A DNA stretch of 64,000 nucleotides from Octopus sinensis. Taxonomy: Eukaryota. The stretch covers positions 1-64,000 of the forward strand of contig NW_021832396.1 of NCBI RefSeq assembly GCF_006345805.1, in the 5' to 3' direction. The position numbers and the translations under genes are program-made. A model generated the notes under the pieces. The model searched no databases. It had not been told where the DNA came from and worked only from the letters and a program-made list of their open reading frames with translations. Positions 1,557-47,599 of this stretch are shown here, in pieces; position 1 is the stretch's first letter; every line of letters starts with the position of its first letter.

Positions 1557-1590
1557 TTTTACTGTTCATCTTTTGCCGGTGAAGAAACAG

Positions 1591-1778
1591 AAATGACAAC
1601 AAAAGATGCTGAAACTAATGGATCAGGAGACAGCTTACCAACCTATGCCTATGTCTTAATTTTCATATCTGTATTTGTAGCCATCGTTATCATAGTCTTC
1701 GTTGTCATATTCAAAAGCAAGTCTTGCATTAAGGTCAAAACTTCTATCACCAAGTACATATCTTGTAAGAAAGGCTAG
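1591..1778 (+). CDS. Orphan terminal exon: stalk + TM helix + short basic tail (xMTTKDAETNGSGDSLPTYAYVLIFISVFVAIVIIVFVVIFKSKSCIKVKTSITKYISCKKG*); end of an upstream paralog of the Ig-like receptor
   Basis: Contains a ~22-residue hydrophobic run. The exon and its upstream intron are homologous to the TM exons at 29.45, 30.74 and 32.07 kb. The homologous acceptor reads CG (1577-78), and an in-phase CAG lies at 1588-90. Confidence 0.6.
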
Positions 1779-16326: not shown

Positions 16327-19300
16327 TAGTTTTATTTTTATATCGTGCTTTCACTTCACTACCGAGCGCAGCTCTGTGTGCCTTGGGTATGTGCTGTGAT
16401 TTGTTGTGATGCTCTGATGGTTATTGTATGGAAAGTGTTCTGCATAGGATGTGTGCAGTGCCTAGTAGTGAAATTTTCTGTATGTTATATGTGTTTGTAA
16501 GTCCTGGTGTTTTTGTTATGTATTTGTCTGAATATTTTTTTATCATGCCTAATGCACCTACTATGATAGGAATTGTTTCTGTTTTTAAATTCCACATTCT
16601 GGTTACTTCTATTTCCAGGTCTTTGTATTTTGAAAGTTTCGCCATTTCTTTTAGAGACACGTTGTCATCTGCCGGTATTGATACATCAATTAGAAAGCAT
16701 TTTTTTTACTTCATGATTTCTAACAACTATATCTGGTCTGTTGGCCTTAATTTCTCTATCTGTGTGTATCGGCATATCCCAAAGTATGGTTGCTTTTTCG
16801 TTTTCTGTGACATTTTCTGGTGTGTGCCTATACCATCTTTTTTCTGTTGTTATTCCATAATGTTGGCGTAGCTTCCAGTGTATGTAGGTTCCAACTCTGT
16901 CATGTCTGTGAATATATTCCTTCTTAGCCAGGACTGGGCAGCCAGAGATAATATGATTTAATGTTTCTTGTCCATCTCCACATATTCTGCAGTTACTTGT
17001 TATATTTCTTTTCATTACATGTTTTTGGTAATTTCTGGTGAGGAGGCTTTGGTCTTGTGCTGCAATTAAAAATCCCTCTGTCCCTGCTTTGAGTTCTGAG
17101 CTTCTCAACCATTGCTGGGATTTTTCTTTGTCTATTTCTTTTGCGTTTAGTTTAGTCCAGTATTTACCATGAAGGGGCTTTTCTTGCCATCGTTTTATAA
17201 TGGTTCGTTGCTGTTCTATTTTTAGTTTGGATTTCATTTGTTTTATAGCTTTTGCTGTTTCTTCATCTTCTTCTTCATATTTATTAGGTGGTATGATTTC
17301 TTCTTTGTATTTGTCAGCTTCCTTAAATACTGAGAACAGTTTTTTTGTTTTGCTCGTGTTTTGCCGCTATTTATATCAGTTTTCCTTACTTCTGAAGTAG
17401 ATATTTTTGCAGTCCTATGGTGGTTATTTTATAGTAGTTTTCCAGCTGCATAAGGCCTCTACCACCTTCTATACGTTGTATATATAGTCTTTTATGTCAG
17501 ATTTTGGGTGATGCATCCTAGATCCTGTCATTATTTTTCTTGTTTTCCTATCTATTTTGGTCAGTTCATTTAGTGTCAAGTTAAGGATATTGTAGCTGTA
17601 ACTTATAACTGGGACAGCTAAAGTGTTGATACCTATTAACTTGTTTTTAGCATTGAGCTCTGTTTTTAGTATTGATCTAACTCGTCTATAATATTCTTTT
17701 TTTAAATTTTCTCTTTCATTTGTGTGTGTTGTATCTCATCTAGTTCATGGATTCCTAAGTATTTGTAAGTTTGGCTTTGGTCTAATTCTTTTATTTCATT
17801 GGTTTTATCTAGTGTGGTGTTGCTACTCTTAACTAGTTTTCCTCTTTTCATGGTTACTTTGGCGCATTTTTCTAATCCAAATTTCATATCTATTTCTTTG
17901 GTAAATCCATGAACTGTCTTTAATAGCGTTTCCAGCAGTTTGTCATTTGCAGCGTATAGTTTTAGGTCATCCATATATAAAAGGTGGCGAGCTGGCAGAC
18001 TCGTTAGCATGCCGGGCGAAATGCGTAGCCGTATTTCGTCTGCCGTTACGTTCTGAGTTCAAATTCCGCCGAGGTCGACTTTGCCTTTCATCCTTTCGGG
18101 GTCGATAAATTAAGTACCAGTTACGCCCTGGAGTCGATGTAATCGACATAATCCGTTTGTCCCTTCTGTGTTTAGTCCCTTGTGGACAGTAGTGAAATAC
18201 ATATATAAAAGTTGGTTGATCGTTTTGCCGTAACATTTATATCCACATCTAGTTCTATTTAGCATATCAGATAGAGGTGACAGTGCCAAGCAGAAAAGGA
18301 ATGGAGAGAGTATGTCTCCCTGGAATATTCCTCTTCTAATGGGGATGGCTTTGGTTTTCATGAGTCCCTCTTTTGTTTGGAGCTGTAACACTGTTTGCCA
18401 TTTATTCATAGAGTGCCCTATGAATTTTATAATTGTTGGTGCTACTTTGTTAATGGCTAGTGTTTCGAGGATCCATGTGTGGGGGATGCTATCAAACGCC
18501 TTTTTGTAGTCGATCCAGGCCATACTGAGGCCTTTCTTCTTTCTGTGGCTGTCTTCAGTTATGGCTTTATTAATCATTAGTTGATCTTTACAGCCATATG
18601 AGCCCTTGCGGCATCCTTTCTGCTCTTCTGGAAACAGGTTGTTTTCGTCCAGGTGCTTGTTCAATCTTTGCGATATTACTGCAGTAAATGCTTTGTACAT
18701 TGTAGGGGGACAGGTTATAGGTCTGTAGTTTTCTGGTTTTGCTGTCTCATTTGATTAAGGAATTAAAATGGTTTTCCCCTTTGTGGGCCATTCAGGCATT
18801 GTCTCTGGCTCTGCTAGCATGCTGTTAAAGTTTTCAGCCAGCTTTTTGTGCATTCCTGTTAGATATTTCAACCAGAAGCTGGGGATCTTGTCATGCCCAG
18901 GTGCCTCCCAGTTGCTTAGTCTTTGCAGTGCCTGGGTGACCTCTTCAGTTGTTATGGGGGTCCAAAGTTGCTCAGATGCTGAGTTTGTTGTTTTAATACT
19001 CCTTTTTTTTGGTTGTTCGTTCGCCGACCATATTTCTCTCCAGAATTCTTCCACTTCTTCTGCCGTTGGTGCTGCAGTGATTTCTATTTTATTTTTGCCA
19101 AGTTCTTGGGAGAACATTTTGGGGTTGGAGTTGAACTGTTTGTTTTGTTCAAAGAAACGTTGGCGTTTCTCGTACCGGCGGATCCTTTGTGCTTTGGCAA
19201 GAATATCTTGCTTTAGTTTTTCTTTTATCTCAGGTAAATCTTTTTCTGTGGTGTTGTATTTGCGGAGTATTTTTGTTTTCTTTTTGTTGCTCAGTAGCGT

Positions 19301-19609
19301 TGATTGTCTACTGATTTCATTAAGAATCGACAGATCTTTTCTCATTTTTTGTATTTTGTTTTGGATGTTATTTATCCACGGGGTTTGTTTGGGTGGTGGT
19401 ACTCCTGTTTGGATGGGTTTGAGTGAGTATCCAGCTTCTTTGGTGGCTGCAGTGGCTGCTGCGTATACTAAGTCATTTAGCTCAGTGATATCGCTTTTTG
19501 TTTCAGTGGCTATTAGTTCCGTGACGGCTAGGTTTATGTTGTTTATAATTGATGTTGTTGTTTTGTCTATTTTGATTTTTGGGAGGTATGGTCGGTGGTC
19601 CATTTTTTA

Positions 19610-21039: not shown

Positions 21040-21690
21040 TCTACCCGACTGGCCTCGTGCCGGTGGCATGTAAAAAGCACCATCCAATTGTGGCCGTTTG
21101 TCAGCCTCGTCTGGCACCTGTGCCAGTGGCACGTAAAAAGCACTATCTGATCGTGGCCGTTTGCCAGCCCCATCTGGCCCCTGTGCCGGTGGCACGTCAA
21201 AAAAACCATCCGATCGTGGCCGTTTGCCAGCCTCGTCTGGCACCTGTGCTGGTGGCACGTAAAAAGCACCATCCGATCATGGCCGTATGCCAGCCTCGTC
21301 TGGCACCTGTGCTGGTGGCACGTAAAAAGCACCATCCGATCGTGGCCGTTTGCCACCCTCGTCTGGCACCTGTGCTGGTGGCACGTAGAAAGAACCATCC
21401 GATTGTGGCCGTTTTCCAGCCTCATCTGGCACCTGTGCTGGTGGCACGTAAAAAGAACCATCCGATCATGGCCGTTGCCAGTCTCGTCTGGCCCCTGTGC
21501 CGGTGGCACGTAAAAAGCACCCACTACACTCACGGAGTGGTTGGCGTTAGGAAGGGCATCCAGCTGTAGAAACATTGCCAGATCAGACTGGCCTTGGTGC
21601 AGCCTTCTGGCTTCCCAGACCCCAGTTGAACCGTCCAACCCATGCTAGCATGGAAAGCAGACGCTAAATGATGATGATGATGATGATGAA
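21040..21690 (+). mobile_element. Meta-domain-like SINE with (GAT)n tail, carrying a ~7-8 x 63-bp internal minisatellite (other copies at ~32175-32570 +, ~50620-50910 +, ~54460-54700 -)
   Basis: GGAGTGGTTGGCGTTAGGAAGGGCATCCAGCTGTAG domain and CCATGCTAGCATGGAAAGC..GATGATGA tail. The unit GGCACGTAAAAAGCACCATCCG... recurs at 21254 and 21317. Confidence 0.8.
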
Positions 21691-21763
21691 GACATTTAAA
21701 GTTTTTCATATCAGTCATGCTCCAGCAGTCAGTTTTCATGCTCTAAAAATTATTTTTCAGACC

Positions 21764-21809
21764 ATGGGCCGTCTAATGTTCTCCTGTCTGATGATTGTAT
21801 TCTGTTTTT
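21764..21809 (+). CDS. Ig-like receptor exon 1 (coding): signal peptide MGRLMFSCLMIVFCF(Y)
   Basis: The start lies in ACCATGG context just after a TTTTTCAG acceptor (21760). It encodes a hydrophobic core and ends at a phase-1 GTAAGT donor (21810). Confidence 0.75.
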
Positions 21810-22592
21810 GTAAGTTTTATTTTGTTTTTGTTTAAGTTTTTGTTTTTTAAATCCTTTTTCCTTAACATTTAGTTTTCTAAAAATAATTGTTTCAAATATC
21901 ATTTACATTAACTTGGAGAATAATTTTTTTTTCTGCCAGTTTTTAATGTTTGTTTTTACAAATATGTTGTATTATTTATTTGGTTTTAGTCAATATAGTT
22001 ACAATCATTTTACAACAGTTCTTGTATCATCATCAAATTTTTTTTTTTTTGTTTTTTGACATCTGATCCATTTTCACATGGCGTACGTCTCAGCAAGACA
22101 ATTTACGAAATGTCTAAGTGGTACATCCCGAATGTTTTTAAAAATTGTATTGATTCATTTTTCACAATAAAAATATTTCAAAAACAAAAAATGTTTGCTG
22201 AAGTTTTTGAAGATGATCCAAAAAATATGATGTATGCATATCAGGAGTATTTGACAGTCCCAAAACACTTAGGAAGCAATGGGTTCTGACAACCAGGATT
22301 TTGTTAGAGGTTGGTTATGTCAGTGCATGACCAACCAATCGGATTTCTGAGTGAGAGGCTGGATCTGACCAGTTAGGACATAAAAACGTGAAACATTTTG
22401 GCCCGATATGGCCAGTTTAAATGCTAAAAGGTTAATGTTTTAACTGAGAACCACATTTTCAATGCCTTCTCTCAAACTACCATTGTATATAATGAGTAAT
22501 TAGATCTACTAGGGTTAATTATCATTTAATCATTATAACACAAATAGTAAACAATCCTGTTGATCAAAAATATTTCTTTTCCTCTTTTACAG

Positions 22593-22631
22593 ATTTCACG
22601 AGAGCAGGAATTTATAAAATTATTCAAAGTG
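22593..22631 (+). CDS. Ig-like receptor exon 2: (Y)FTRAGIYKIIQS(E), the end of the signal peptide and the start of domain 1
   Basis: Pyrimidine tract + TACAG acceptor and G|GTAAAT donor; 39 nt, phase 1-1. Paralogous to 26298-26354. Confidence 0.75.
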
Positions 22632-23303
22632 GTAAATGGATTTACAAACCTTTTTCTCCCTTGAAACTAAAGTCTTTTCAAATCTGTCTTCTATCTCTTT
22701 CTCTTAACTCAGAAGATTTAGTCACTGTTTGGGGTGTCTTTTTATTTTTTGCTTTTTAAAAAAATTCTTGGGCAGTTCACTAACACAACTCAGTCACTGA
22801 TATTGTTCTTTAGATAAAGCTACAGCTTTGAATCTGCCCATGGTTATCTCCCTTTGGCATTTCCCATTGATGAAGGTTAAAGAGCAAGAAACACGCATTG
22901 GGGAGTCCACTGAGGAGTGGTTTACATCTCAGGTTGAGATGGCTGTTGGGGGTCCGTATAAGATTTTGTTGCTAAAATTTATGTACAATTAATTGGTTTT
23001 AGCTTTACAGTACACCAAATTTTTAATTAATTTTTTAAATACAGTTCCTAATAATATTTAATTATAAAAATAGGATTTTTTAAAACATGAAATGTTTATA
23101 AGGGCCCACCGAGCAAAACAGGAATCAAAAGGGACCATAGGTGAAGAATGGTTGAAAATCATTGTGTTATAGGTAAGCACTGGGCAGATATGGTGTTTTC
23201 ACACCTTTTACCATCAGTGAGAAATCCTTCTCTTTGGTAAATGCAGTAAATTTGCCTTTAGAAGTTAAAATATGTCACAAACATATTTTAACTAAGGAGC
23301 ACA

Positions 23304-23340
<37 letters not shown>

Positions 23341-24694
23341 GTCATCATCATGAAATGTCCATGGATTGAGCTGTTCAATAGGATCCAGCAAGCCACAGGA
23401 TTGTGTTGAGCTCCAATCCCTGAATAGGCAGGGCTTATATTGTTTGATGACCCACCTAACACCGACCACTTTACAGAGTGTAGTGGCTGCCCCTTTTCAT
23501 TGCACCACCATTCATTTGGTTACTGTTATAGCTGGGATTATGATAGCCATTCTAAATAGGATTGCGGTTATCATGTCTATCATCATAATTTGATGTCCAC
23601 GGCCCCTTTTTAATGTCAATCATTTTACAGAGTAATTGAGCCTTTTTTTAACATGCAGTACCAAATAACTGGAAAGACAGAGGGAAAAGAAGAAAAAACC
23701 CTTGACTGGGGAGTGTTGCGGAGATGGATGTGGCTTTACACAATGTGTTGAGAGGTTGAAGTATGATAGAAGGACAGGAACATGTGTCTTACTGTAGAGA
23801 GTATATATGGTGATACTGCATTATATAAGGCAGGGCATGAGTAAATGGATAGATATGTGATTTATTCAGACATACACCCATGTCTGACGAACACACTGAA
23901 TATTTTTTTTAACCCCTTAATATAGGGTTTGGACGTAGAGAAGTTTCTCCATTTCATATTGAAATTGGTCCCTTAATCTTTAAGTTTCCAGATTAAAGCC
24001 AAAAGGGTTCTTGTCATGGTATCTATTAAAACACTTGAGAACCTCCAATGAATACATAAATTCAAGGAATGAGATTTTTTTACTGTATGTCCGCATCTCA
24101 GAAAATACATGTTGTCAGAATTTAAAAGGATACTACCAGACACTTAGTTAAGCATTAACATCTGGTTTACATCTGGTTTACATCTGCTTGCCATAGAATT
24201 ATTGTAATGTGGGTTATCTCCCTTGCTGCCTTAACATATACATACATAACAACATACATAGAAATAAGAGCTAAAGTGCTCTGGTGCTGCAGTCAATGCA
24301 CACGCTTGCATACATACATACTGGCAGCAACTGCAAATGGGTGAAGGTGGCAGTCGTGGTATGCCTGGACCGTCGACAGTTTGGGTTTTAACACAGAAGC
24401 CTCATCACCGACCCTGTTGTTGAGTGCTTATTTTAAGCATGGTACTTATTCTGTTGGTCGTTTTTGCTGAACTGCTAAGTTATAGGGATGTGAACACACC
24501 AACGCTGGTTGTAAAAACAGTGGTGGGGGAAAACACTGACACACACACACACACATGATGGACTTCTTATAGTTTCCGTCTACCAAATCCACCAGGTTTT
24601 GGTTGGCCCCAAGGTTATTGTAGAAGCTTACCCAGACTGAACCCAGAACCATGTGGTAGGGCAGTAATCTTCTTACTTGATTTCTTTATTTCAG

Positions 24695-24943
24695 AAAATG
24701 TTGTGCTTGGAGGAAGTGCTAGACTTTCTATATATATTCCAAACATGAAGAGACCCACGGTGTGGAAATGTGGAAACTATAAATACGAATGTGACAGAAC
24801 ATGCGCTAATGGCCCTGAATATACAGTTACCCACAGTGGTAACCATTCTGTTCTTTGGATCCGAAAAGTAACAAAGGAATGTTTGACTTGGATGTTTGAA
24901 GACGACAATATTAATGTTGGAAAAATTCATTTGAAAATAAACA
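24695..24943 (+). CDS. Ig-like receptor exon 3: atypical Ig-like domain 1 (NVVLGGSARLSIYIPNMKRPTVWKCGNYKYECDRTCANGPEYTVTHSGNHSVLWIRKVTKECLTWMFEDDNINVGKIHLKIN)
   Basis: TTTCTTTATTTCAG acceptor and A|GTAAGG donor; 249 nt, phase 1-1, open. The G-x-S-A-x-L, C-strand W and L-x-I-x-x-V spacing is Ig-like. Confidence 0.85.
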
Positions 24944-24957
24944 GTAAGGAAATGATT

Positions 24958-24989
<32 letters not shown>

Positions 24990-26297
24990 GATAAATGTGC
25001 AAAAGCTACCTTTATCAAAGGAAAAAATGATAGAAATATCCAACGTTAAGTAATTTCTTTTATTTGCTACACAGGCTAAGGATAAGGGGACAACACAATG
25101 ATAGGCGTAAAGTGTAGGGAGTTTACATGTTATGCAATGATAATAAAATATATAAACGATTTAACTTAAACGAAGATAGGAAGTATAGATTGCATGCAAC
25201 AACAGGAGATAAAAGAAAGAGATGACAGTGTTGTGTCTAGGGATAACCAAGGAATTTCATCATCCAAGATCTCCCTGAACACCAAGGGCATGTGACCCCT
25301 CCGATTCCTACTCTCCAACCCAAACAACTGGTTGTTTTTAAAGAGGCACGGGTGCCTCTTGTGTGTCACTCGTACAAGTGTTTTTCACGTGTCACCGACA
25401 CTGGCCATGGCCACAATTTCACTGAGCTTGACTTGTCTTCTCAAGTACAGCAGATGGTCAGAAATCTCGGTCACTGGTCATTGCTTCTGTGAAACTCAAC
25501 ATCTAAACATCATATTTCACCGACCCGTCCCAAATCTTACCGAGTCAACCTCTTCCATGGTTTGCCTCCACAGTTAGAAATCGGTACTTCTTTACACAAC
25601 TGTCGTTGTACATTTAATTTTAGAATGACATTATCGGATAGTTGAGAAACTTTAATATGGGCCAGATATGGTTGGTTTAATCCTTCAAGGTTCAGATCAC
25701 TCTGTCAAGTGTAATGTTCATTCATTTGCATTGTTTTGAATTAATCATTCATTATCTTCTTACGACATTTTGATGATGTAATTGTTTATCTTTAAACTGA
25801 CATTGTAGGGTAGGAGTGAGAGGCTGGATCTGGCCAATTTGAACATAAAACAGGTAGAATATTTGGCGTGGATATGGCAAGTTTAAATACTAAACAATTA
25901 ATTCTTTAGCATTTAGATTAATCTATCAAATGTAATGCTTATAAATTCAAAATGTTTTGAATTAATTATTCATTATCTTGTAGATTTCAGATTTAGATGA
26001 TTGCTTAATTTTACAATGACATTGTAAGTTTGGTGTGAGAGGCTGGATCTGACCAGTTTGGATATAAGAAAGGTGAAACATTTTGGCCAGACATGGCCAG
26101 TTTAAATGCTAAATGGTTAATGTTTGAACTGAGAACCACATTTTCAATGCCTTCTCTCACACTGCCACTGTATATAATGTGTAATTAAATCTACTCGTGT
26201 TAATTACTATTTAATTATTGTAACAGAAATAGGAAACAATCTTGTTGATCGAATGTAAAATCTGAAATTCAAAAGTCCTTGTATTCATCTTCCACAG

Positions 26298-26354
26298 ATT
26301 TGGCAAATGCAAACGATTTGAGGACAGAAGGAGTTTATAATATCACCCAAAGTG
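26298..26354 (+). CDS. Ig-like receptor exon 4: linker (N)LANANDLRTEGVYNITQS(E)
   Basis: TCTTCCACAG acceptor and G|GTAAGT donor; 57 nt, phase 1-1. Its flanking introns are paralogous to those of exon 2. Confidence 0.78.
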
Positions 26355-27070
26355 GTAAGTGGATTACCTTATCCCCTTTCGCCTTCTAAACTAGACACAA
26401 CTTTTTCAAATCTCTCTTCTATTTCTTTCACTCAACTCATAAATTTTATTCACTGTTTCATTTGTGTTTTTTGATTTCTTAAAACATTTATTCCGACCAG
26501 GCAGTTCACTAGCACAACTCAGTCACTGATAGTGACTGCTCTTTAGATAAAACAACAGCTTTGAATCTGCTCAGGTTTATCTTTCTCTGGAGTTTCCTAT
26601 TGATAAAGGCTAATGAGCCAGAATCACTCATCGGGGAATCCACTAGAATAGTGGTTTTTAACCGGGGTCAGTATGGCTGTTGGGGGTCCATATAGGATTT
26701 TGTTGTTAAAATTTATGTACAATTAATTGGTTTTAGCTTTACAGTACACCAAATTTTTAATCAATTTTTTAAATACAATTCCTAATAATATTTAATTATA
26801 AAAATAGGATTTTTTAAAACATGAAATGGTTATAAGGGTCCACCTGAGTGAAATAGAAATCAAAAGGGTTGCATTGTGTTATAGGTAAGCACTGGGCAGA
26901 TATGGTGTTTTCACACCTTTTACCATCAGTGAGAAATCCTTCTCTTTGGTAAATGCAGTAAATTTGCCTTTAGAAGTTAAAATATGTCACAAACATATTT
27001 TAACTAAAGAGGGATTACTTATGATTGGCAGTTTCACTCTTAGGGCACAAATAATAATAATAATAATAAT

Positions 27071-27965
27071 CCTGGAAACATGGATCCTAGAAACAGTAGC
27101 CATGAACAAGGTAGCACCAATAATTATAAAATATATAAAACTCTCTATGAATAAATAGCGGACAGTGCTACAGCTCCAAACAAAAGGAGGACACATAAAA
27201 AGCAAAGCCTTTCTCATTAGAAGAGGAATATTCCAGGGAGACATGCTCTCTCCACTCCTTTTCTGCTTGGCACTGACAACTTTATCTGACATACTCAACA
27301 GAACTAGATGCAGATGGCAACAACAATCAGCCACCTCTTATATATATGGATGACCTAAAACTGTATACTACAAATGATAAACAGCTGGAAACATTATTAC
27401 AGGCAGTACATGGATTTACCAACGAAATAAATATGAAATTTAGCTTATAAATAAATATAAAATGTGCAAAACAATCTTGAAAAGAGGAAAACTAGTTAAG
27501 AGTAGCGACATCAAACTAAATAAAGCAAATGAAATAAGAGAATTAGAAGCCAGACATACAAATATTTGGGAATAAAAAAAAAGAATACTATAGACAAGTT
27601 AGATTAATACTGAAAACAGAGCTCAATGCAAAAAACAAGATAATAGGTATCAACACTTTAGCCGTCCCAGTTATAAGTTACAGCTACAATATCCTTAACT
27701 TGACACTAAAGGAACTAATCAAAATAGACAGGAAAACAAGAAATATAATGACAGGATCTAGGATGCACCACCTAAAATCTGACACAGAAAGACTATATAT
27801 GCAACGTATAGAAGGTGGTAGAGGCCTTATACAGCTGGTAAACTATTATAAATTAACCACCATAGGACTGCAAAAATACCTACTTCAGAAGCAAGGAAAA
27901 CTAATACAAATAGCCACAAAACACGAACAAAACAAAAAAAAACTGTTTTCAGTCTTTAAGGAAGC
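27071..27965 (+). mobile_element. Decayed internal fragment of the same R4/Dong family, starting at an intronic (AAT)n
   Basis: GIFQGDMLSPLLFCLAL, HLLYMDDLKLY, MHHLKSDTERLY..GGRGL. The paralogous intron has only (AAT)n at 23305-23340. Confidence 0.88.
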
Positions 27966-28813
27966 TGTCAAAAGAGACCGATAGAATAAGTACTGGGCTT
28001 CCAAAGAATAAGCTCTGGGGTTGATTTGCTCGACTAAAGGCAGTGCTCCAGCATGGCTGCAGTCAAATGACTGAAACAAGTAAAAAGAGTGAAGAGAATG
28101 TATGTACATAAATATTTCAAATTTTTTTGCCACAAGGGCAGCTTGCGGAAGGTGGGGATGAGTGGATTACAGTGACCCCAGTATGCCACTGGTACTTAAT
28201 TTATCAACCCCAAAAGGATGAAAGCCATAGTCGACCTCAGTGAAATTTGAATTCAGAACGTAGTGGCAGGTGAAATACCGCTTAGCATTTTGCTTGGCGT
28301 GCTAACAATTCTGCCAGGTTGCTGCCTTGACATATATATACATAACAACATACATAGAAATAAGAGCTAAAGTGTTCTGGTGCTGCAGTCAATGCACACG
28401 CTTGCATACATACATACTGGCAGCAACTACAAATGGGTGAAAGTGGCTGTCGTGGTATCCCTGGACTGTCGACAGTTTGGGTTTTAACACAGAAGCCTCA
28501 TCACCGACCCTGTTGTTGAGTGCTTATTTTAAGCATGGTACTTATTCTGTTGGTCGTTTTTGCCGAACTGCTAAGTTATAGGGATGTGAACACACCAACG
28601 CTGGTTGTAAAAACAGTGGTGGGGGACAAACACTGACACACACACACACACACACAGATGATGAACTTTTTATAGTTTCCGTCTACCAAATCCACTAGGT
28701 TTTGGTTGGACCCAAGGTTATTGTAGAAGCTTACCCAGGGTGCCATGCAGTGGGACTGAACCCAGAACCATGTGGTTGGGCTGTAATCTTCTTACTTGAT
28801 TTCTTTATTTCAG

Positions 28814-29062
28814 AAAATGTTGTGCTTGGAAGAAGTGCTAAACTTTCTATATATATTCCAAACATGAAGAGACCTGTGGTGTGGAAATGTGGAAACTATA
28901 AATACGAATGTGACAGAACATGCGCTAATGGCCATGACTATAAAGTTACCCACAATGGTAACCATTCTGTTCTTTGGATCCGAAAAGTAACAAAGAAATG
29001 TTTGACTTGGATGTTTGTAGATGACAATATTAATGTTGGAAAAATTCATTTGAAGATAAACA
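28814..29062 (+). CDS. Ig-like receptor exon 5: atypical Ig-like domain 2
   Basis: Same splice sites and length as exon 3; 236/249 nt identical; open, phase 1-1. Confidence 0.85.
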
Positions 29063-29076
29063 GTAAGGAAATGATT

Positions 29077-29362
29077 TATAATAATAATAACAACAACAAC
29101 AACAACAACAATCATAATGATAATAATAATGATAATAATAAAAATAATAATAATAATAATGATAATAATAATAATAATAATAATAATGATAATAATAATA
29201 ATAATGATAATAATAATAATGATAATAATCATAATAATCATAATGATAATAATAATAGTGATAATAATAATAAAAATAAAAATAATAATAATGATAATGA
29301 TAATAATAATGATGATGATGATGATGATGATGATGATAATAATAATAATAATAATAATAATA
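29077..29362. repeat. Compound (AAT/AAC/GAT)n microsatellite forming most of the Ig2-to-TM intron
   Basis: Direct inspection. Confidence 0.95.
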
Positions 29363-29452
29363 AGGTTGGGATCAAAAGGGTTCAGCCTTATTGATATTAC
29401 TATCTTTTCTTCAAAACAAAAAGTATCTGTTTTCTTGTAGGACTTGAAGCAG

Positions 29453-29655
29453 ATGAAGAAACAAAAGATTGTGAAGCTGATGGATCAGGAATACCCACCT
29501 CTACCATTGTCGTCATTTTTGTACTTTGTCTTGAAAACATCATTCTCATAATCTTGTGGTTCAAATTCAAATTGCCTCCTTACGATTGGTGCAGGAACCG
29601 TGTCACCCGCAGGATACCTCGTAATGAACCCCAGAATCAACAGGTTGAGGTATAA
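29453..29655 (+). CDS. Terminal exon A: stalk + TM + tail ((N)EETKDCEADGSGIPTSTIVVIFVLCLENIILIILWFKFKLPPYDWCRNRVTRRIPRNEPQNQQVEV*)
   Basis: Phase-1 acceptors at 29440 (TTGTAG) and 29452 (GCAG) are both in frame. A hydrophobic run is followed by basic residues; TAA at 29653-55. Confidence 0.78.
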
Positions 29656-30737
29656 AAATGCTATGTTTTGCGATTTTTTTTTCTTATAGACTTTCAATGA
29701 TTGTATTAGTATATTCTGTTGTGTCTGGGGAGAGTCATTTTCTTTTTGTGCCTTATGATGTAACACATTTGATGTAGTGGTTTAGTCTCATCTTTTCAAA
29801 AACCCTGCTCAAGTGGTGGGGGGGGAACAAACACAGACACAAAGACCCCTTCCCCCATACACACATATGTCTGTGATTATAATTTAATACAATTCATTTT
29901 TATTATGGATATTCATGTAATGCATGCAACTTGACACATAGTAACCACCCAGGGGCAATACCTGGGGCACATCTACACATGAATGCTCCAAAGACTTGCC
30001 TCATGACTTTCACAAAAATGTATATTTTTTAAGGAAATTTTCTACAAATCCACTTCAGATGGTGTAGATTCTTTTTATACTCGAATTTGATGTGACAAAA
30101 TTTTCTGCCAAAAAATGTGATTTTTTTCTGAAAGCTATTTCTAACAAGTCAAGAAACCACATAAAAGTTATGCTTGTGTTAATCTCCATGGCAATAGCAA
30201 TATGTGAACAATGGATGATTTCGATTGGCTAAAATTACTTAACTTTAAGTGCATGTAACTTTTTTATTATTTGTTTTTAGAAATAATGAGTGTGATTTTC
30301 ATTATCCGTATCCAAAACTCCATCAGAACTATAATTTTTTTAAGTAATCAGGTGAAAATAGGCGTATTGATACAGTTTTGTAAAGTAATGAATGCCATGA
30401 AATTCATTTTCACCATAGATCGATACATAAACAGCTAATATCATTTAAAATTTGCGAATTTTGGATAATTTTATGTAGGTGCCTGTTTCCATAACAACAA
30501 GCCAAGTTGCTTACCATGTGTTCTTTTTCTCACTTTTTAAAAGCTAGTGTTTGGAACACAAGTTTATTTGAAGTCTTGATGGAAGGTTTTATTTTAGATC
30601 TCTTTAAAACAGGGAATTCATACAATAAAAACAAAGGCAGTTTTCAGTAGGTTGGGATCAAAAGGGTTCAGCCTTATTGATATTACTATCTTTTATTAAA
30701 AACAAAAAGTATATGTTTTCTTGTTCATCTTTTGCAG

Positions 30738-31080
30738 ATGAGGGTGCCGGAAGCAGCAGATCAGCAAACGGATCAGGAAGCAGCAGATCAGCAAATGGAT
30801 CAGGAAGCAGATCAGCAATGGATCAGGAATCAGCAAAGCAGCAAATGGATCAGGAAGCAGCAGATCAGCAAATGGATCAGGAATCAGCAAAGCAGTTAAT
30901 GAATCTGGAACCAGCATCCCCACCTGCGCCGTAGTCATCATTTCTGTACTTGGTCTTGTAGCCATCCTTCTCATAATCTTCTCTGTCATATTCAAGTGGC
31001 TTCTTTACATTTGGATCAGGAACCGTGTCAACGAGTGGATATCTCCTAATGAATACCAGAATCCACCGGTTGAAGCATAA
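30738..31080 (+). CDS. Alternative/paralogous terminal exon B: Ser/Gly NGS-repeat stalk + TM + Tyr-containing tail; a 1-nt deletion near 30817 shifts the frame (allele or sequencing error)
   Basis: TTTTGCAG acceptor. Restoring one A gives ..GSSRSANGSG..VNESGTSIPTCAVVIISVLGLVAILLIIFSVIFKWLLYIWIRNRVNEWISPNEYQNPPVEA*. The 3' flank is closely similar to that of exon A. Confidence 0.6.
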
Positions 31081-32070
31081 AAATGCTATGTTTTTTTATT
31101 TTTTCTTCTTATAGACTTTCAATGATTGCATTAACATATTCTGTTGTGTCTGGGGAGAGTCATTTTCTTTTTGTGCCTTATGATGTAACACATTTGATGT
31201 AGTAGTTTAGCATCATCTTTTCAAAAACCCTGCTCAAGTGGTGTGGGGAATAACACAAACCCACCAACACCTGTTGTCAAGTAGTGGGGAGGGAGGACAA
31301 ACACAGACACAAAGACCCCTTCCCCCATACACACATATGTCTGTGATTATAATTTAATGCAACTCATTTTTATTATGGATGTTCAGGTAATGCATGCACC
31401 ATGACATATAGTAACCACCCAGGGGCAATACCTGGGGCACATCTACACATGAATGCTCCAATGACTTGCCTCATGACTTTCACAAAAATCTATATTTTTT
31501 AAGGAAATTTTCTACAAATCCACTTCAGATGGTGTAGATTCTTTTTATACTCGAATTTGATGTGACAAAATTTTCTGCCAAAAAATGGGATTTGTGTTCG
31601 TACGTATCCCACCAATTTAATTTTTCATATTAAATTCCGATATAATTACAATCTACAAACTCTGAAAGGAATTTGTAGAAATTTTCATTTTTCTGAAAGC
31701 TATGAAGAGACAAAGTCAGTGGAGCATATCTGTGTGTGTGTGTGCTAATTGGTTTCACATAAATATTTTTCATTATAATTTTAAAGACTACATTTTTATT
31801 ATTATTATTATTGCCTTTGTTTCAATAAATTTTGAAAATAAAGAATTCAATGAAATAATTTTGTCCTTACTAAGCTAGTGTTTGGAACACAAGTTTATTT
31901 GAAGCCTTGATGGAAGGTTTTACTTTAGATCTCTTTAAAACAGGGAATTCATACAATGAAAACAAGAGTGGTTTTCAGCAGGTTGGGATCAAAAGGGTTC
32001 AGCCTTATTGATATTACTATCTTTTATTAAATACAAAAGGGTATATGTGTTTATTGATCATCTTTTGAAG

Positions 32071-32700
32071 ATTAGCAAACAACAAGATTTGGATCTAATG
32101 TATCCAGATGTATCCTACTCACTACAGATAGCGAAACAACATTTAAGAAGTTGATTATCCGAGTGGGATCACTGCCAGAGCAGCTGTCTGGCTTCCGTTC
32201 CGGTGGGCACGTAAAAAGCACCATTTGAGCGTGATCATTACCAGCGTTGCCTTACTGGCATGTGAACAAAACATCCTAGCGAGGTCGTTGCCAGTGCCGC
32301 TGGACTGACTCCTGTGCACGTGGCACATAAAAAACCACCATTTCGAGCATGGCCGTTGCCAGTACCACCAAACTGGCCCTCATGCCGGTGGTACGTAAAA
32401 AGCACCCACTACACTCTCGGAGTGGTTGGGCGTCCAGCTGTAGAAACTCTGCCAGATCAAGACTGGAGCCTGGTGCAGCCATCTGGTTCGCCAGCCCTCA
32501 GTCAAATCGTCCAACCCATGCTAGCATGGAAAGCGGACGTTAGATGATGAGGAGGAGGAGGAGGAGGAACCAGCATATACATCTATGCCATAGCCATCCT
32601 TCTCATAACCCTGTTTGTCATAATCCGATGCTAACACTTCCTGTCCATTCCATACTTTCTAAAGAACACCAGAATTCAATGGAGGCATAAAAATGCTACA
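32071..32700 (+). pseudogene. Terminal pseudo-exon C, split by a Meta-like SINE
   Basis: The upstream intron is paralogous to those of A and B. A TAG stop follows the acceptor directly. GGATCA|SINE|GGAACCAGC is followed by GTSIYIYAIAILLITLFVIIRC*. Confidence 0.65.
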
Positions 32701-38400: not shown

Positions 38401-39319
38401 CATTAGACAAAACTCAGGTTTCCAGTATAAATGCCATTTTAAGTGAGATTTTAAAAACCATCACCTTCTTTGTATTATTGTTTACCTCTTTTTATAAGGG
38501 TTTTCTTCAAAATCCTATCACTATCAGCTCTTAGCATGTTCCACTCAAAAGATGGAACAGTGAAATATAGACAAGCAACAACCGGCGAGTGTGGTTCTAG
38601 TGTTTATCATTTATGAATTATGCAGGTTTGATAAGATTAGGAAGAAAATGGAGGAAGAGAACTTTAATTATGTTAAAGAATTTCTCCAAAAATATCCAAA
38701 TAAAATAAGTTGTTCTTTGTATTTGCTGCTAAATATTTAACAATACTACCTTAAACTTCAGAAATGCTATTAAAAGCAGGAGCTGAACAATTCTGTCCTG
38801 GTGCGGACATAAAGTCGCTTTGGACAATACGAAAGGAACGCATCTTCTTAGACCCACGTTCAGTACTTCTTGACTGATCCTTCATTTTTGGCAGAGTTGC
38901 CATGTTCTTGGTGCAAAAAGTCCAACATACAATGCTTCCACGAATTTCATAAAAAGCATTAGAAAGTATCGACTTGTTTAATTAAGCAAGCAACTATATG
39001 CACAAGTCCATTAGGAGTAAAACAAAGAAAAGTGACTGAAGCATTGAAAATATCGCAAAAGTAAGCCCAAACCATCCAAATGATAGAAGATGCTGTTTGT
39101 ATTGTTTGGCAGATATTTAGCAGAAACGTTAAGGGAAATCAAAGAACGTGACATTGAAGGGGTCACAAACGGAATGAAAACACATCCAGAAGCAATAAGT
39201 GGTTCTGCTTTGGAGTGTTGCAAAATGTGACCATGACACAGGTCCAGGAAATGATGCCACTACACTTTATACAAGAAAATTGTGTCCCCAAAGTCCATCC
39301 CCTCCTCACCGTGGTGGGG

Positions 39320-40870
39320 ACGCTGGCAACGGGTAGTGTCAGAGCTCTGCTGTCCGGAACCTCGATTCCTGGTAGAGCCACCAAAGGCAGATTGGTCTGA
39401 CACTGAGTGGTATTAGGGCCACAACCCGGGACGCTAGCAATGGGTAGTGTCAGAACTATGCCGTCGGGAACTTCGGTTCATGGTAGGGCCACCCAAGGCA
39501 GATTGGTCTGACACCGAGTGGTATTAGGGCCACAACCCAGGACGCTAGCAATGGGTAGTGTAAGAGCTATGCCGTCGGGAACTTCGGTTCCTGGTAGGGC
39601 CACCCAAGGCAGATTGGTCCAACACCGAGTGGTATTAGGGCCACAACCCGGGACGCTAGCAATGGGTAGTGTCAGAGCTATGCCGTCGGGAACTTCGGCT
39701 CCTGGTAGGGCCACCCAAGGCAGATTGGTCTGACACCGAGTGGTATTAGGGCCACAACCTGGGACGCTAGCAATGGGTAGTGTCAGAACTATGCCGTCGG
39801 GAACTTCGGTTCATGGTAGGGCCACCCAAGGTGGATTGGTCTGACACCGAGTGGTATTAGGGCCACAACCCAGGACGCTAGCAATGGGTAGTGTAAGAGC
39901 TATGCCGTCGGGAACTTCGGTTCCTGGTAGGGGCCACCAAGGCAGATTGGTCCAACACCGAGTGGTATTAGGGCCACAACCCGGGACGCTAGCAATGGGT
40001 AGTGTCAGAGCTATGCCGTCGGGAACTTCGGCTCCTGGTAGGGCCACCCAAGGCAGATTGGTCTGACACCGAGTGGTATTAGGGCCACAACCCGGGACGC
40101 TAGCACTGGGTAGTGTCAGAACTATGCCGTCGGGAACTTCGGTTCATGGTAGGGCCACCCAAGGCGGATTGGTCTGACACCGAGTGGTATTAGGGCCACA
40201 ACCCAGGACGCTAGCAATGGGTAGTGTAAGAGCTATGCCGTCGGGAACTTCGGTTCCTGGTAGGGCCACCCAAGGCAGATTGGTCCAACACCGAGTGGTA
40301 TTAGGGCCACAACCCGGGACGCTAGCAATGGGTAGTGTCAGAGCTATGCCGTCGGGAACTTCGGCTCCTGGTAGGGCCACCCAAGGCAGATTGGTCTGAC
40401 ACCGAGTGGTATTAGGGCCACAACCCGGGACGCTAGCAATGGGTAGTGTCAAAACTATGCCGTCGGGAACTTCGGTTCATGGTAGGGCCACCCAAGGCAG
40501 ATTGGTCTGACACCGAGTGGTATTAGGGCCACAACCCAGGACGCTAGCAATGGGTAGTGTAAGAGCTATGCCGTCGGGAACTTCGGTTCCTGGTAGGGCC
40601 ACCCAAGGCAGATTGGTCTGACACCGAGTGGTATTAGGGCCACAACCCGGGACGCTAGCAATGGGTACTGTCAGAGCTATGCCGTCGGGAACTTCGGTTC
40701 CTGGTAGGGGCCACCCAAAGCAGATTGGTCTGACACCGAGTGGTATTAGGGCCACAACCCGGGACGCTAGCAATGGGTAGTGTCAGAGCTATGCCGTCGG
40801 GAACTTTGGTTCCTGGTAGGGCCACCCAAGGCATTTTGGTTTGACACCAAGTGGTATTAGGGTCACTACC
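39320..40870. repeat. 111-bp satellite, ~14 units, with a 333-bp higher-order trimer
   Basis: GACGCTAGC at 39430, 39541 and onward. Diagnostic variants recur every 333 bp (spurious ORFs start at 39518, 39851, 40184). Confidence 0.95.
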
Positions 40871-41250
40871 CGGCAGACGGGGCTCTGGTGAAAATTCTCA
40901 GAGTGTCTGCTTCGGCAACCGGCGGCTCCTCGGTCGTTCTGTCCCTGCGTCTGCGGACAATCTGTGGCAAACAGGATGTTCCTACATGTGGGATTGTTGG
41001 GGACCGCTTGTGAAATCAACATATTCCCACAAAACTTCTTCCGGAGGACCTCTCCATGCTCACGGGATCGCAGGTGGTCAGCGTGCGCCGATGGAACCGT
41101 GACTGGCTCACTATCTCCAGTGAATTGGCGCAGGACCGTCGTGCGTGGGGTGCCATGGTTCAAGATGCCTCAAGGGTGGTAGAAGAAGCCGAATCAACCG
41201 GCCCCGGATGAATGTCACCACAAGTACAAATACAAGTAAGTATACAAGAC
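40871..41250 (+). mobile_element. RTE-clade LINE 3' end with a (CAAGTA)-like tail
   Basis: EDLSMLTGSQVVSVRRWNRDWLTISSELAQDRRAWGAMVQDA..ESTGPG* followed by CAAGTACAAATACAAGTAAGTA. Confidence 0.7.
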
Positions 41251-45611: not shown

Positions 45612-47570
45612 TGGGGGGGTCACTTGTCTATCCAACTGGATGCCTCCTCGGGGCCAGTTCTGCAGACTACACACTTGTTTGAAGGACACCCTGAACGGGC
45701 TGTAAATAAACAAACTCAACTCGGAGGCCTTGGTCGGACAAAAGAAGAATTTAAACAGAATGGGGGGGGGGTCAATTGTCTGTCCAACTGGATGCCTCCT
45801 CGGGGCCAGTTCTGTGGCCCACACACTTGTTTGAAGGACACCCTGAAGGGGCTGTAAATAAACAAACTCAACTCGGAGGCCTTGGTCGGACAAAAGAAGA
45901 ATTTCAACAACAGGATGGCGGGGGGGGTCACTTGTCTATCCAACTGGATGCCTCCTCGGGGCCAGTTCTGTGGCCCACACACTTGTTTGAAGGACACCTG
46001 AAGGGGCTGTAAATAAACAAACTCAACTCGGAGGCCTGGTCGGACACAAAGAAGAATTTTAACAGGATGGGGGGGGGGTCACTAGTCTATCCAACTGGAT
46101 GCCTCCTCGGGGCCAGTTCTGTGGCCCACACACTTGTTTGAAGGAACCCTGAAGGGGCTGTAAATAAACAAACTCAACTCGGAGGCCTGGTCGGACAAAA
46201 GAAGAATTTAAACAGGATGGGGGGGGGTCACTTGTCTATCCAACTGGATGCCTCATCGGGGCCAGTTCTGTGGCCCACACACTTGTTTGAAGGACACCCT
46301 GAAGGGGCTGTAAATAAACAAACTCAACTCGGAGGCCTTGGTCGGACAAAAGAAGAATTTAAACAGGATGGGGGGGGGTCACTTGTCTGTCCAACTGGAT
46401 GCCTCCTCGGGGCCAGTTCTGTGGCCCACACACTTGTTTGAAGGACACCCTGAAGGGGCTGTAAATAAACAAACTCAACTCGGAGGCCTTGGTCGGACAA
46501 AAGAAGAATTTAAACAGGATGGGGGGGGGGTCACTTGTCTATCCAACTGGATGCCTCCTCGGGGCCAGTTCTGTGGCCCACACACTTGTTTGAAGGACAC
46601 CCTGAAGGGGCTGTAAATAAACAAACTCAACTTGGAGGCCTTGGTCGGACAAAAGAAGAATTTCAACAGGATGGGGGGGCCACTTGTCTGTCCAACTGGA
46701 TGCCTCCTCGGGGCCAGTTCTGCGGCCCACACACTTGTTTGAAGGACACCCTGAAGGGGCTGTAAATAAACAAACTCAACTCGGAGGCCTTGGTTGGACA
46801 AAGAAAATTTCAACAGGATGGGGGGGTCACTTGTCTGTCCCACTGGATGCCTCCTCGGGGCCAGTTCTGTGGCCCACACATTTGTTTGAAAGACACCCTG
46901 AAGGGGCTTTGTAATAAACAAACTCAACTCGGAGGCCTTGGTCGGACAAAGAAGAATTTCAACAGGATGGGGGGGGGGGGGTCACTGTCTGTCCAACTGG
47001 ATGCCTCCTCGGGGCCAGTTTCTGCGTCCCACACACTTGTTTGAAGGACACCCTGAAGGGGCTGTAAATAACAAACTCAACTCGAGGCCTTGGTCGGACA
47101 AAAGAAGAATTTAAACAGGAGGGGGGGGGCACTTGTCTGTCCAACTGGATGCCTCCTCGGGGCCAGTTCTGCGGCCCACACACTTGTTTGAAGGACACCC
47201 TGAAGGGGCTGTAAATAAACAAACTCAACTCGGAGGCCTTGGTCGGACAAAAGAAGAATTTAAACAGGATGGGGGGGGGGGGCACTTGTCTGTCCAACTG
47301 GATGCCTCCTCGGGGCAAGTTCTGTGGCCCACACACTTGTTTGAAGGACACCCTGAAGGGGCTGTAAATAAACAAACTCAACTCGGAGGCCTTGGTCGGA
47401 CAAAAGAAGAATTTAAACAGGATGGGGGGGGTCACTTGTCTATCCAACTGGATGCCTCCTCGGGGCCAGTTCTGTGGCCCACACACTTGTTTGAAGGACA
47501 CCCTGAAGGGGCTGTAAATAAACAAACTCAACTCGGAGGCCTTGGTCGGACAAAAGAAGAACTTCAACAG
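45612..47570. repeat. ~150-bp satellite, ~13 units, each with a variable poly-G tract
   Basis: The unit ...GGGGTCACTTGTCTATCCAACTGGATGCCTCCTCGGGGCCAG...GGTCGGACAAAAGAAGAATTT repeats at a ~151-bp period. Confidence 0.95.
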
Positions 47571-47599
47571 AATGGACTGGCAAACCTGGATTGCAGAGG

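What the first reader, a model, noticed from the sequence alone, without database searches (positions are those of the whole stretch)
21764..32700. Hidden modular receptor: signal - Ig-like x2 - choice of three TM/tail exons, all phase 1
Seen: six exons with canonical GT-AG sites join into an uninterrupted ~280-aa type I membrane protein that the ORF track misses. Every intron is phase 1, so either Ig module can be skipped. The Ig2 donor could splice to terminal exon A, B or (dead) C, each with its own paralogous intron and 3' flank. A further TM paralog lies at 1.6 kb. Known: symmetric phase-1 exons are the IgSF shuffling pattern, and tandem, fast-evolving IgSF clusters with alternative tails typify immune and self-recognition receptors. 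Inference: a lineage-specific, combinatorial cell-surface receptor family. I do not recognise a named orthologue.
Basis: partly seen in the sequence, partly recalled or inferred. Interest (0 to 1): 0.85.

Follow-up and report, generated by a model that had tools for sequence, protein, structure and literature searches.

The report
Octopus two-Ig membrane protein gene
This is a real, already annotated but unstudied Octopus sinensis gene for a small cell-surface protein with two divergent immunoglobulin-like domains, from a gene family seen so far only in octopods; the proposed choice between three membrane anchors does not hold up in this sequence.

Summary
The six exons are real. The window is Octopus sinensis scaffold VCDQ01005255.1. 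RefSeq already annotates the gene as LOC115229017, "uncharacterized protein", isoforms X1 and X2.

Each ~97-aa module folds as an Ig domain. The AF2 model has pLDDT 89, and all top Foldseek matches are V/I-set Ig domains. Pfam's Ig models stay below cut-off, and the canonical B-F disulfide is absent. Instead the family has an invariant Trp and a YEC-x3-C motif.

Named relatives (at least 20 O. sinensis loci) come only from Octopus species and Argonauta. I found no paper on the family.

The "three alternative tails" claim fails here.
- Ig2 spliced to exon B in phase 1 meets a stop before TM-B, because of a 1-nt deletion in a 27-bp repeat. That reading is intact in O. vulgaris.
- Gene models in both species instead splice exon A to exon B in phase 0, reading B in another frame as a Gln/Asp/Glu-rich cytoplasmic extension.
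- Exon C has been dead since before the species split.

Skipping of Ig modules is annotated in the O. vulgaris orthologue. Compared with that orthologue, the window gene lacks 16.3 kb, including a third Ig module. Function is unknown; a surface recognition or adhesion role is inferred.

The parts
21764..21809 (+). Exon 1: ATG and most of the signal peptide (MGRLMFSCLMIVFCF). Phase-1 donor GTAAGT.
   Evidence: Hydrophobic core has Kyte-Doolittle mean 2.72.
22593..22631 (+). Exon 2 (39 nt, phase 1-1): end of the signal peptide plus strand A of Ig domain 1 (YFTRAGIYKIIQS).
   Evidence: Strand E10-12 of the AF2 model lies in this exon. The orthologous exon in O. vulgaris has intact splice sites.
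24695..24943 (+). Exon 3 (249 nt, phase 1-1): body of Ig-like domain 1, strands A'/B to G, with WKC...YECDRTC...KEC.
26298..26354 (+). Exon 4 (57 nt, phase 1-1): inter-domain linker plus strand A of Ig domain 2 (NLANANDLRTEGVYNITQS). Paralogue of exon 2.
   Evidence: Its O. vulgaris orthologue has intact splice sites but is skipped in the O. vulgaris gene models.
28814..29062 (+). Exon 5 (249 nt, phase 1-1): body of Ig-like domain 2. It differs from exon 3 at 13 of 249 nt and is 89% identical in amino acids.
29078..29363 (+). (AAT)n microsatellite in the last phase-1 intron. It marks the junction where the window lacks 16.3 kb present in O. vulgaris (linker 3, Ig domain 3 and a 14-kb intron).
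29441..29655 (+). Tail exon A: juxtamembrane segment, TM helix (IVVIFVLCLENIILIILWF) and a short cytoplasmic tail. Alternative acceptors at 29441 (X1) and 29453 (X2). Either it reads to the stop at 29653-29655 (...QVEV*), or the donor at 29649|29650 is spliced to exon B.
30738..30899 (+). Exon B as used in the RefSeq models: phase 0 after exon A, adding a 53-aa Gln/Asp/Glu-rich tail (MRVPEAADQQ...NQQSS*). It overlaps the 27-bp repeat at 30749-30916.
   Evidence: The same junction is annotated in O. vulgaris (P0073, P0074) and in LOC118762047 (P0085).
30871..31080 (+). Relic TM/tail reading of exon B (NGSGISKAVNESGTSIPTCAVVIISVLGLVAILLIIF...PPVEA*). It cannot be reached in frame from the exon B acceptor in phase 1 because of a 1-nt deletion near 30812.
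32071..32690 (+). Tail unit C: a dead pseudo-exon. Phase 1 meets TAG at once, a repeat is inserted at 32186-32568, and the TM remnant at ~32560-32690 is degraded. O. vulgaris shows the same state.
1560..1775 (+). Terminal TM/tail exon of the upstream neighbouring family member. The rest of that gene lies off the start of the window.

Best explanation
The locus is a real protein-coding gene, O. sinensis LOC115229017.

Product (shown by sequence, model and hydropathy):
- A small type I membrane protein: signal peptide, two divergent I/V-like immunoglobulin-fold domains, one TM helix and a short cytoplasmic tail.
- Each Ig domain is built from a pair of phase-1 exons: a short exon carrying strand A and a 249-nt exon carrying the rest. 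Exons or whole modules can therefore drop out without breaking the frame.

Family (shown):
- It belongs to a fast-evolving family found so far only in octopods, much of it clustered in tandem on one chromosome. Members carry 1-4 such modules.

The 3' end (shown by sequence; usage rests on gene models):
- It is a tandem array of duplicated tail units, not three interchangeable anchors.
- Unit A supplies the membrane anchor.
- A weak donor overlapping A's stop codon can splice to unit B. B is then read in a different frame from its ancestral TM frame, as a low-complexity acidic and Gln-rich cytoplasmic extension.
- B's own TM reading has decayed in O. sinensis. Unit C is an old pseudo-exon.

Function (inferred):
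- The protein sits on the cell surface and binds a partner through the exposed faces of its Ig domains, where sequence varies most (for example the outward-facing residues of the F-G hairpin). That would make it a recognition or adhesion molecule.
- Splicing may vary the number of modules and the C-terminus (...VEV-COOH versus the extended tail).
For: - Exact ORF and splice sites. Identity to RefSeq isoforms X1 and X2 at the same coordinates.
- Collinear O. vulgaris orthologue at 96-97% nt identity, with three isoforms. That annotation added alternative forms only from Iso-Seq/RNA-seq assemblies through PASA (PMC10700109).
- Ig fold: AF2 pLDDT 89.4 and pTM 0.81. All top Foldseek PDB matches are Ig V/I-set domains, probability 1.00, TM-score 0.5-0.67.
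- The module profile also hits obscurin-type I-set arrays at E = 1e-26.
- Buried and exposed positions alternate on strand F: W79, F81 and D83 are conserved, while 80 and 82 are variable.
- TM segment Kyte-Doolittle mean 2.89.
- The A->B phase-0 junction is modelled at three loci in two species.
- B's phase-1 reading is truncated in 3 of 3 O. sinensis copies and intact only in O. vulgaris.
- C carries the same insertion in both species.
- Exonic divergence between the species is 5.6-6.4%, against about 3.5% in the flanking introns. dN/dS is 0.55-1.9.
Against: - I saw no RNA reads. All splicing evidence comes from gene models.
- Pfam Ig models stay below cut-off for this protein (I-set 17.1 bits against 23.7).
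- The gene lacks the third, membrane-proximal module that its O. vulgaris orthologue and closest relatives have.
- Its TM helix carries a Glu and an Asn mid-membrane.
- dN/dS near 1 is also what relaxed constraint would give.
- The locus is on an unplaced scaffold. The 16.3-kb gap and the 1-nt indel could be assembly errors.
- The phase-0 tail is open in all three frames simply because of the repeat. Its C-terminal half is not conserved between copies, so it may be splicing noise.
- The function is inference only.
Confidence: 0.62

Rival explanations
1. One reading: a combinatorial receptor in which the Ig2 donor chooses among alternative terminal exons A and B (C being dead). Each would give a different TM helix and tail, as with the two alternative TM exons of insect Dscam1.
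For: - A, B and C are tandem paralogous units with the same acceptor context.
- In O. vulgaris, exon B read in phase 1 from that acceptor is fully open through a good TM helix.
- Family members do carry different C-termini: two TM types, and ends that look GPI-like or secreted.
Against: - In this window, phase 1 into B stops before the TM.
- The same is true of both B copies on scaffold VCDQ01005367.1.
- No RefSeq or O. vulgaris isoform joins an Ig exon to B. All of them use A for the anchor.
- A database search with the GSG-repeat + TM-B peptide found no protein using that reading. This is a weak negative, because the search also missed known positives.
Confidence: 0.1
2. A decaying gene copy. 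A deletion removed the third Ig module, the B exon is frameshifted and the TM helix has picked up polar residues. The locus may be transcribed but drifting towards a pseudogene.
For: - The window lacks 16.3 kb, including D3, relative to O. vulgaris.
- dN/dS is about 1.
- Exon A is only 80.7% identical to its positional orthologue, where the flanks are 96-97%.
- Glu and Asn sit in the TM helix.
- B is frameshifted.
Against: - The 840-nt ORF has no stop or frameshift, and all ten splice sites are canonical.
- Both modules keep every invariant or near-invariant core residue of the family (W37, C46, C50, I69, W79, F81).
- Two-module members exist elsewhere in the family (P0009, P0011, P0014, P0015).
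- The unusual LCLEN TM motif is shared with another locus (P0085). That argues for a retained tail type rather than random damage.
Confidence: 0.18
3. Partly an assembly artefact. The missing third module and the 1-nt frameshift in exon B are errors of a long-read assembly in repeats, on an unplaced scaffold. The true O. sinensis gene would look like the O. vulgaris one.
For: - The deletion junction lies exactly in an (AAT)n microsatellite.
- The indel lies inside a 27-bp tandem repeat.
- The scaffold is unplaced.
Against: - Two other O. sinensis B copies also have broken phase-1 readings, with a different repeat structure.
- Exon A differs from A of O. vulgaris by about 19%, far more than collapse or polishing errors would explain.
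Confidence: 0.1

Closest known systems
I-set / V-like immunoglobulin-superfamily domains of cell-adhesion molecules (structural neighbours found here: antibody VL domains, obscurin and twitchin I-set domains, Kirrel3 Ig5, sDscam Ig1, CD2)
   Same: - Beta-sandwich of 8 strands.
- Invariant Trp on strand C.
- A 'YKVT..(N)TSTLWIxxV' D-E segment that aligns to titin and obscurin Ig domains.
- The layout of type I membrane IgSF molecules.
   Different: - No B-F disulfide.
- An invariant YEC-x3-C pair in the C'-D region instead, plus an optional C40-C76 pair that appears or disappears together.
- Pfam Ig models are not reached at their gathering scores.
- Each domain is split by a phase-1 intron after strand A.
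Alternative TM exons of Drosophila Dscam1 (exons 17.1/17.2) and the cassette arrays of chelicerate sDscam (from my own knowledge, not tested here)
   Same: Duplicated exons in tandem within an IgSF gene. Symmetric-phase Ig exons allow in-frame combinations.
   Different: The duplicated tail exons here are not mutually exclusive alternatives. B is read after A, in another frame. B's TM frame is broken in this species.
Lineage-specific, clustered, divergent IgSF families of invertebrates, such as the Hydractinia Alr allorecognition family and snail FREPs (from my own knowledge, not tested here)
   Same: A taxon-restricted multigene family in tandem clusters. Its Ig-like domains are hard to detect by sequence, evolve quickly and have many splice isoforms.
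   Different: There is no fibrinogen domain, unlike FREPs. I saw no ITIM- or ITAM-like motifs in the tails by eye. There is no evidence of allelic hypervariability or of any recognition phenotype.
Dual-coding or frame-switched alternative exons (for example INK4a/ARF; from my own knowledge)
   Same: One stretch of DNA (the exon B repeat) can be read in two frames, depending on the upstream splice partner.
   Different: The repeat has no stop in any forward frame, so an open frame is not evidence of selection. The tail sequence is poorly conserved between copies.

Membership tests
Immunoglobulin superfamily (Ig-like fold, I/V-type) | Two-sheet Greek-key beta-sandwich that superposes on solved Ig domains | tested here: met
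   AF2 on a 39-sequence module alignment gave pLDDT 89.4 and 8 strands. All 50 listed Foldseek PDB matches are Ig domains or whole Ig-containing chains and complexes (9 at E<=1e-3, the rest 1.0-1.8e-3), probability 1.00, TM-score 0.49-0.67.
Immunoglobulin superfamily (Ig-like fold, I/V-type) | Match to a curated Ig sequence model (Pfam I-set, Ig_3, ig or V-set) at the gathering score | tested here: not met
   The window protein scores 17.1 bits on I-set against a cut-off of 23.7. Only 5 of 39 modules give any Ig hit at E<0.01. The profile against PDB sequences is non-significant: titin 0.16, CD2 0.92. Two paralogues carry precomputed PF07679 hits. The module profile does hit obscurin I-set arrays at E = 1e-26.
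Immunoglobulin superfamily (Ig-like fold, I/V-type) | Canonical inter-sheet disulfide between strands B and F | tested here: not met
   The modelled B strand (residues 22-27) has no conserved Cys in the 39-module alignment (one member has a Cys at its first column). The F strand (residues 78-83) has Cys only in a subset of modules, at position 82 (F-C-D). The invariant Cys residues are C46 and C50, in YEC-x3-C. Some genuine Ig domains also lack this bond, so it is not decisive.
Immunoglobulin superfamily (Ig-like fold, I/V-type) | Conserved Trp in strand C packing into the core | tested here: met
   W37 is invariant in 39 of 39 modules and lies in predicted strand E35-39.
Type I single-pass membrane protein | N-terminal signal peptide, one C-terminal hydrophobic helix of about 19+ residues, basic residues after it | tested here: met
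   Hydropathy only. Signal core Kyte-Doolittle mean 2.72. TM IVVIFVLCLENIILIILWF scores 2.89 and is followed by KFK. No dedicated predictor or experiment was used.
Mutually exclusive alternative terminal (TM) exons | Each alternative exon gives an in-frame anchor when joined to the common upstream donor | tested here: not met
   A meets this. B stops before its TM in phase 1. C stops at its first full codon.
Mutually exclusive alternative terminal (TM) exons | Transcripts that join the upstream exon directly to each alternative | not testable with these tools
   No read-level RNA data were available. Among gene models only ...->A and A->B junctions occur.
Octopod 'YECDRTC' Ig-module family (unnamed; defined here) | A ~97-aa module with W37, YEC46-x3-C50, I69 and W79-x-F81-x-D83, encoded by a short exon plus a 249-nt exon | tested here: met
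   Both window modules score 153-154 bits against the family HMM and carry all the invariant residues.

The most novel reading that the evidence does not exclude
The family could be an octopod-specific surface recognition code. Variable exposed faces on unusual, disulfide-shifted Ig domains, skipping of modules, and switching of the C-terminus (a ...VEV end versus an acidic Gln-rich tail made by reading a duplicated TM exon in another frame) would together generate cell- or individual-specific identities. One example would be the skin-sucker self-recognition known from behaviour, or haemocyte non-self recognition.
Probability: 0.07. Interest if true: 0.8.

Novelty: new member of a known kind. 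Interest (0 to 1): 0.35.

Why it matters
The finding gives a structural identity to a block of octopus genes that databases list only as "uncharacterized": membrane proteins with 1-4 divergent Ig-like modules. More than 20 loci are named in O. sinensis alone, seemingly confined to octopods, and no paper on them turned up. Taxon-restricted IgSF families are frequent sources of immune, adhesion and neuronal-wiring specificity, so this one is a reasonable candidate list for expression and binding studies in cephalopods. The locus is also a compact example of how tandem exon duplication, gene conversion, microsatellite-bounded deletion and frame-switched reuse of a duplicated exon reshape a receptor gene between two sibling species. 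It is not a new kind of system, and its function remains open.

Tried and rejected
- **Pfam and PDB sequence searches of the whole protein.** Only sub-threshold Ig hits came back, so the Ig assignment rests on the fold and the profile evidence.
- **Further family exons in the window.** tblastn with 29 family proteins found only the known exons and the 1.6-kb tail exon. Weak 'CGFRWKENSYKILQS' matches at 35324, 37024 and 42516 have no splice sites and were rejected as chance.
- **Literature.** Twelve LOC identifiers and two keyword searches found nothing on the family.
- **Search for proteins that use the GSG-repeat + TM-B reading or the Gln-rich tail.** It returned one protein (P0085) and missed known positives. 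It is a poor negative test.
- **Exact look-ups of P0001 and P0005 on contigs.** Both failed because only the longest isoform is indexed. P0029 and P0074 worked.
- **dN/dS.** Values scatter from 0.55 to 1.9 on 2-5 synonymous differences. That is too few to separate positive selection from relaxed constraint.
- **ITIM, ITAM and similar tail motifs.** I saw none by eye. The C-terminal V-E-V resembles a class II PDZ ligand, but it is not family-wide, so I make no claim.
- **Disulfide geometry.** It could not be checked because model coordinates are not exposed.


Full report
**Where the window comes from.** That entry is [quoted passage not shown]. The longer isoform X1 (P0029) maps to contig VCDQ01005255.1 of assembly GCA_006345805.1 at 21764-30899, the same coordinates as in the window. 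The window is therefore positions 1-64000 of an unplaced 68,872-bp O. sinensis scaffold. Composition (32-50% GC), microsatellites and satellites fit an octopus genome.

**Checking the observation.** The exons are 21764-21809, 22593-22631, 24695-24943, 26298-26354, 28814-29062 and 29453-29655.
- Each has a polypyrimidine-AG acceptor and a GTAAG/GTAAA donor.
- All five introns are phase 1.
- The joined ORF is 280 aa with no interruption. Residues 1-279 equal the RefSeq protein.
- The internal duplications are real. 22351-23299 matches 26035-27011 at 80% nt. 24223-24989 matches 28319-29108 at 93% nt. The three tail units share upstream and downstream flanks.

Joining 29062 to 30738 in phase 1 reads "EGAGSSRSANGSGSSRSANGSGS", then slips frame and stops at "...EPASPPAP*", immediately before the TM-B segment.

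Both RefSeq isoforms continue past exon A. The last codons of A are GAG|GTA TAA. The GT (29650) is used as a donor and joined to the exon B acceptor (30738) in phase 0. That gives [quoted passage not shown], with the CDS ending at 30899. Isoform X1 differs only by an acceptor 12 nt upstream, at 29441, which inserts RLEAD in place of N.

**The orthologous locus in O. vulgaris.** The window is collinear with OX597842.1 at 27.44-27.50 Mb at 95-98% nt identity. The orthologous gene has three isoforms.
- P0074 (413 aa): D1, D2 and D3, then tail A, then tail B in phase 0.
- P0005 (349 aa): the same modules, but ending in A (...PPVEV*).
- P0073 (330 aa): skips D1.
- P0074 and P0005 skip the orthologue of exon 4, although its splice sites are intact. 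P0073 lacks it too, because it joins exon 2 directly to D2.

The genome paper states that alternative forms were added by PASA from Iso-Seq and RNA-seq assemblies (PMC10700109). These isoforms are therefore indirect transcript evidence for spliced expression, for module skipping and for the A->B junction. A third locus, O. sinensis LOC118762047 (P0085), is also modelled with the A->B phase-0 junction.

**Exon B is not a working alternative anchor here.**
- In O. vulgaris, exon B is open in phase 1 from the same acceptor, through GSG repeats and a good TM helix. It is also open in phase 0.
- The window differs by a 1-nt deletion ("gc-aatgg") inside a 27-bp tandem repeat (30749-30916). The deletion breaks both readings relative to O. 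vulgaris.
- The two B copies on another O. sinensis scaffold (L004, VCDQ01005367.1) have a different repeat structure, and they too stop before the TM in phase 1.
- So the TM reading of B is not maintained in O. sinensis.
- The repeat has no stop in any forward frame. An open phase-0 tail is therefore not in itself evidence of selection. Only its first ~12 residues are conserved between copies.

**Unit C and copy number.** Unit C carries a repeat insertion (32186-32568, related to 21109-21692) and an immediate TAG in phase 1. O. vulgaris shows the same state, so C died before the species split. L004 carries four units (A', B, B, C), so the number of tail units varies.

**Differences from the orthologue.**
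- Between the end of D2 and tail unit A, the window lacks L003 17403-33722, or 16.3 kb. That segment holds linker exon 3, a third module of the membrane-proximal type (with F-C-D...C) and a 14-kb intron.
- The junction lies in an expanded (AAT)n tract at 29078-29363.
- Exon A is only 80.7% identical to its positional orthologue, although the flanks are 96-97%. Its TM helix reads LCLENIILI where the orthologue reads LCLVAILI.
- The LCLEN form recurs in LOC118762047, so it is a retained tail type. Gene conversion among tail units is the likeliest cause. This is inference.

**The modules are Ig-like.**
- Pfam gives only a sub-threshold I-set hit.
- I extracted 61 modules from 29 family proteins and aligned 39 distinct ones (A1). 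Invariant residues are W37, C46, C50 and I69. Nearly invariant ones include W79, F81 and D83.
- AF2 on this alignment gave pLDDT 89.4, pTM 0.81 and eight strands. The first strand lies in the short exon.
- All 50 listed Foldseek matches against the PDB were immunoglobulin domains or chains containing them: VL domains, nanobodies, obscurin I-set, Kirrel3 Ig5, twitchin and sDscam Ig1. Probability was 1.00 and TM-score 0.49-0.67.
- A profile search of 1.84 billion representatives found 54 proteins. These are small octopod proteins plus giant multi-Ig proteins (obscurin-like, from lamprey, coelacanth and gar). In the three such giants I scanned, Pfam finds arrays of I-set domains.
- The canonical B-F disulfide is absent. 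C40 and C76 appear and disappear together across modules, which suggests an alternative bond (inference).
- Conservation alternates along strand F, as expected for a strand with one buried and one exposed face. The variable positions 80, 82 and 88 face outward on the F-G hairpin.

**The family.**
- All named relatives are "uncharacterized" or "hypothetical" proteins of O. sinensis, O. vulgaris, O. bimaculoides and Argonauta hians.
- At least 20 distinct O. sinensis LOC identifiers appear. Many sit on one 21.3-Mb contig, and the O. vulgaris members sit on one 34.6-Mb chromosome.
- Members have 1-4 modules and several kinds of C-terminus.
- The nearest non-cephalopod hit checked is a weak match in abalone.
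- Some unnamed Logan-derived hits could not be assigned to species.
- No paper mentions any of twelve LOC identifiers. Keyword searches found nothing on the family.

**Rate of change.** Orthologous Ig exons differ at 5.6-6.4% of nucleotides, against about 3.5% in the flanking introns. dN/dS is 0.55-1.9, but it rests on only 2-5 synonymous differences. D2 of the window is closest to D1 of O. vulgaris, which points to exchange between modules. This fits fast evolution but cannot separate diversifying selection from relaxed constraint.

**Verdict.** The finding describes a real gene, already annotated, from an uncharacterised family seen only in octopods. Its product is a type I membrane protein with divergent Ig-like modules.
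- The exon structure, the phases and the Ig call are right.
- Modular skipping is supported by models of the orthologue.
- The "choice of three tails" is not supported. A is the anchor, B is a frame-switched 3' add-on whose own TM reading has decayed, and C is long dead.
- Function is unknown. I commit to a surface recognition or adhesion role as the most likely, at moderate confidence.
- A drifting gene copy and partial assembly error remain live rivals for the peculiarities of this particular locus.

Noticed in passing
window 16686-19603 (- strand); also ~27340-27370 (+) inside intron 4: Remnant of a non-LTR retrotransposon between the two family genes (RVT_1 at E=3.6e-16, plus a zf-RVT hit below its cut-off). 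A second reverse-transcriptase-like fragment (YMDDLKLY) lies inside intron 4.
   Followed up: partly
window 21057-21521; related copies at 32186-32568 and 50619-50742: A 63-bp tandem array (7.4 copies) ends about 240 bp upstream of the start codon. A related repeat element is the insertion that disrupts dead tail exon C.
   Followed up: partly
window 39317-40873, 45613-47575, 48437-50484, 58048-60677: Large satellite arrays downstream of the gene: 111 bp x14, 152 bp x13, 32/64-bp and 111/182-bp arrays, and 63 bp x42 at 97% identity. No family exons lie among them.
   Followed up: no
L004 (O. sinensis VCDQ01005367.1) exon starts 1893, 4513, 6970, 8218: A second scaffold carries a four-unit tail array (A', B, B, C) with a 2.46-kb period between the two B units. 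It starts at the contig end, so its Ig exons are not seen. This shows copy-number variation of the tail units, or it is a haplotig.
   Followed up: partly
window 29521-29535 (codons for LCLEN in exon A): The TM helix carries a mid-membrane Glu and Asn. They are shared with LOC118762047 but absent from the O. vulgaris orthologue and from exon B. A charged TM residue could mediate pairing with a partner subunit, or it could be damage.
   Followed up: partly
window 32071-32075 and L003 36681: Splicing Ig2 to unit C in phase 1 would meet TAG at once, giving a soluble two-Ig form ending ...KINN*. The same holds in O. vulgaris. No gene model uses this.
   Followed up: no
window 29441 vs 29453: Two acceptors 12 nt apart for exon A give RefSeq isoforms X1 (RLEAD) and X2 (N).
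   Followed up: yes
proteins P0022-P0028 (other chromosomes; Octopus and Argonauta): A more distant subfamily has one such module followed by a different Cys-rich domain and one or several TM segments. It is the only branch with named Argonauta members.
   Followed up: no
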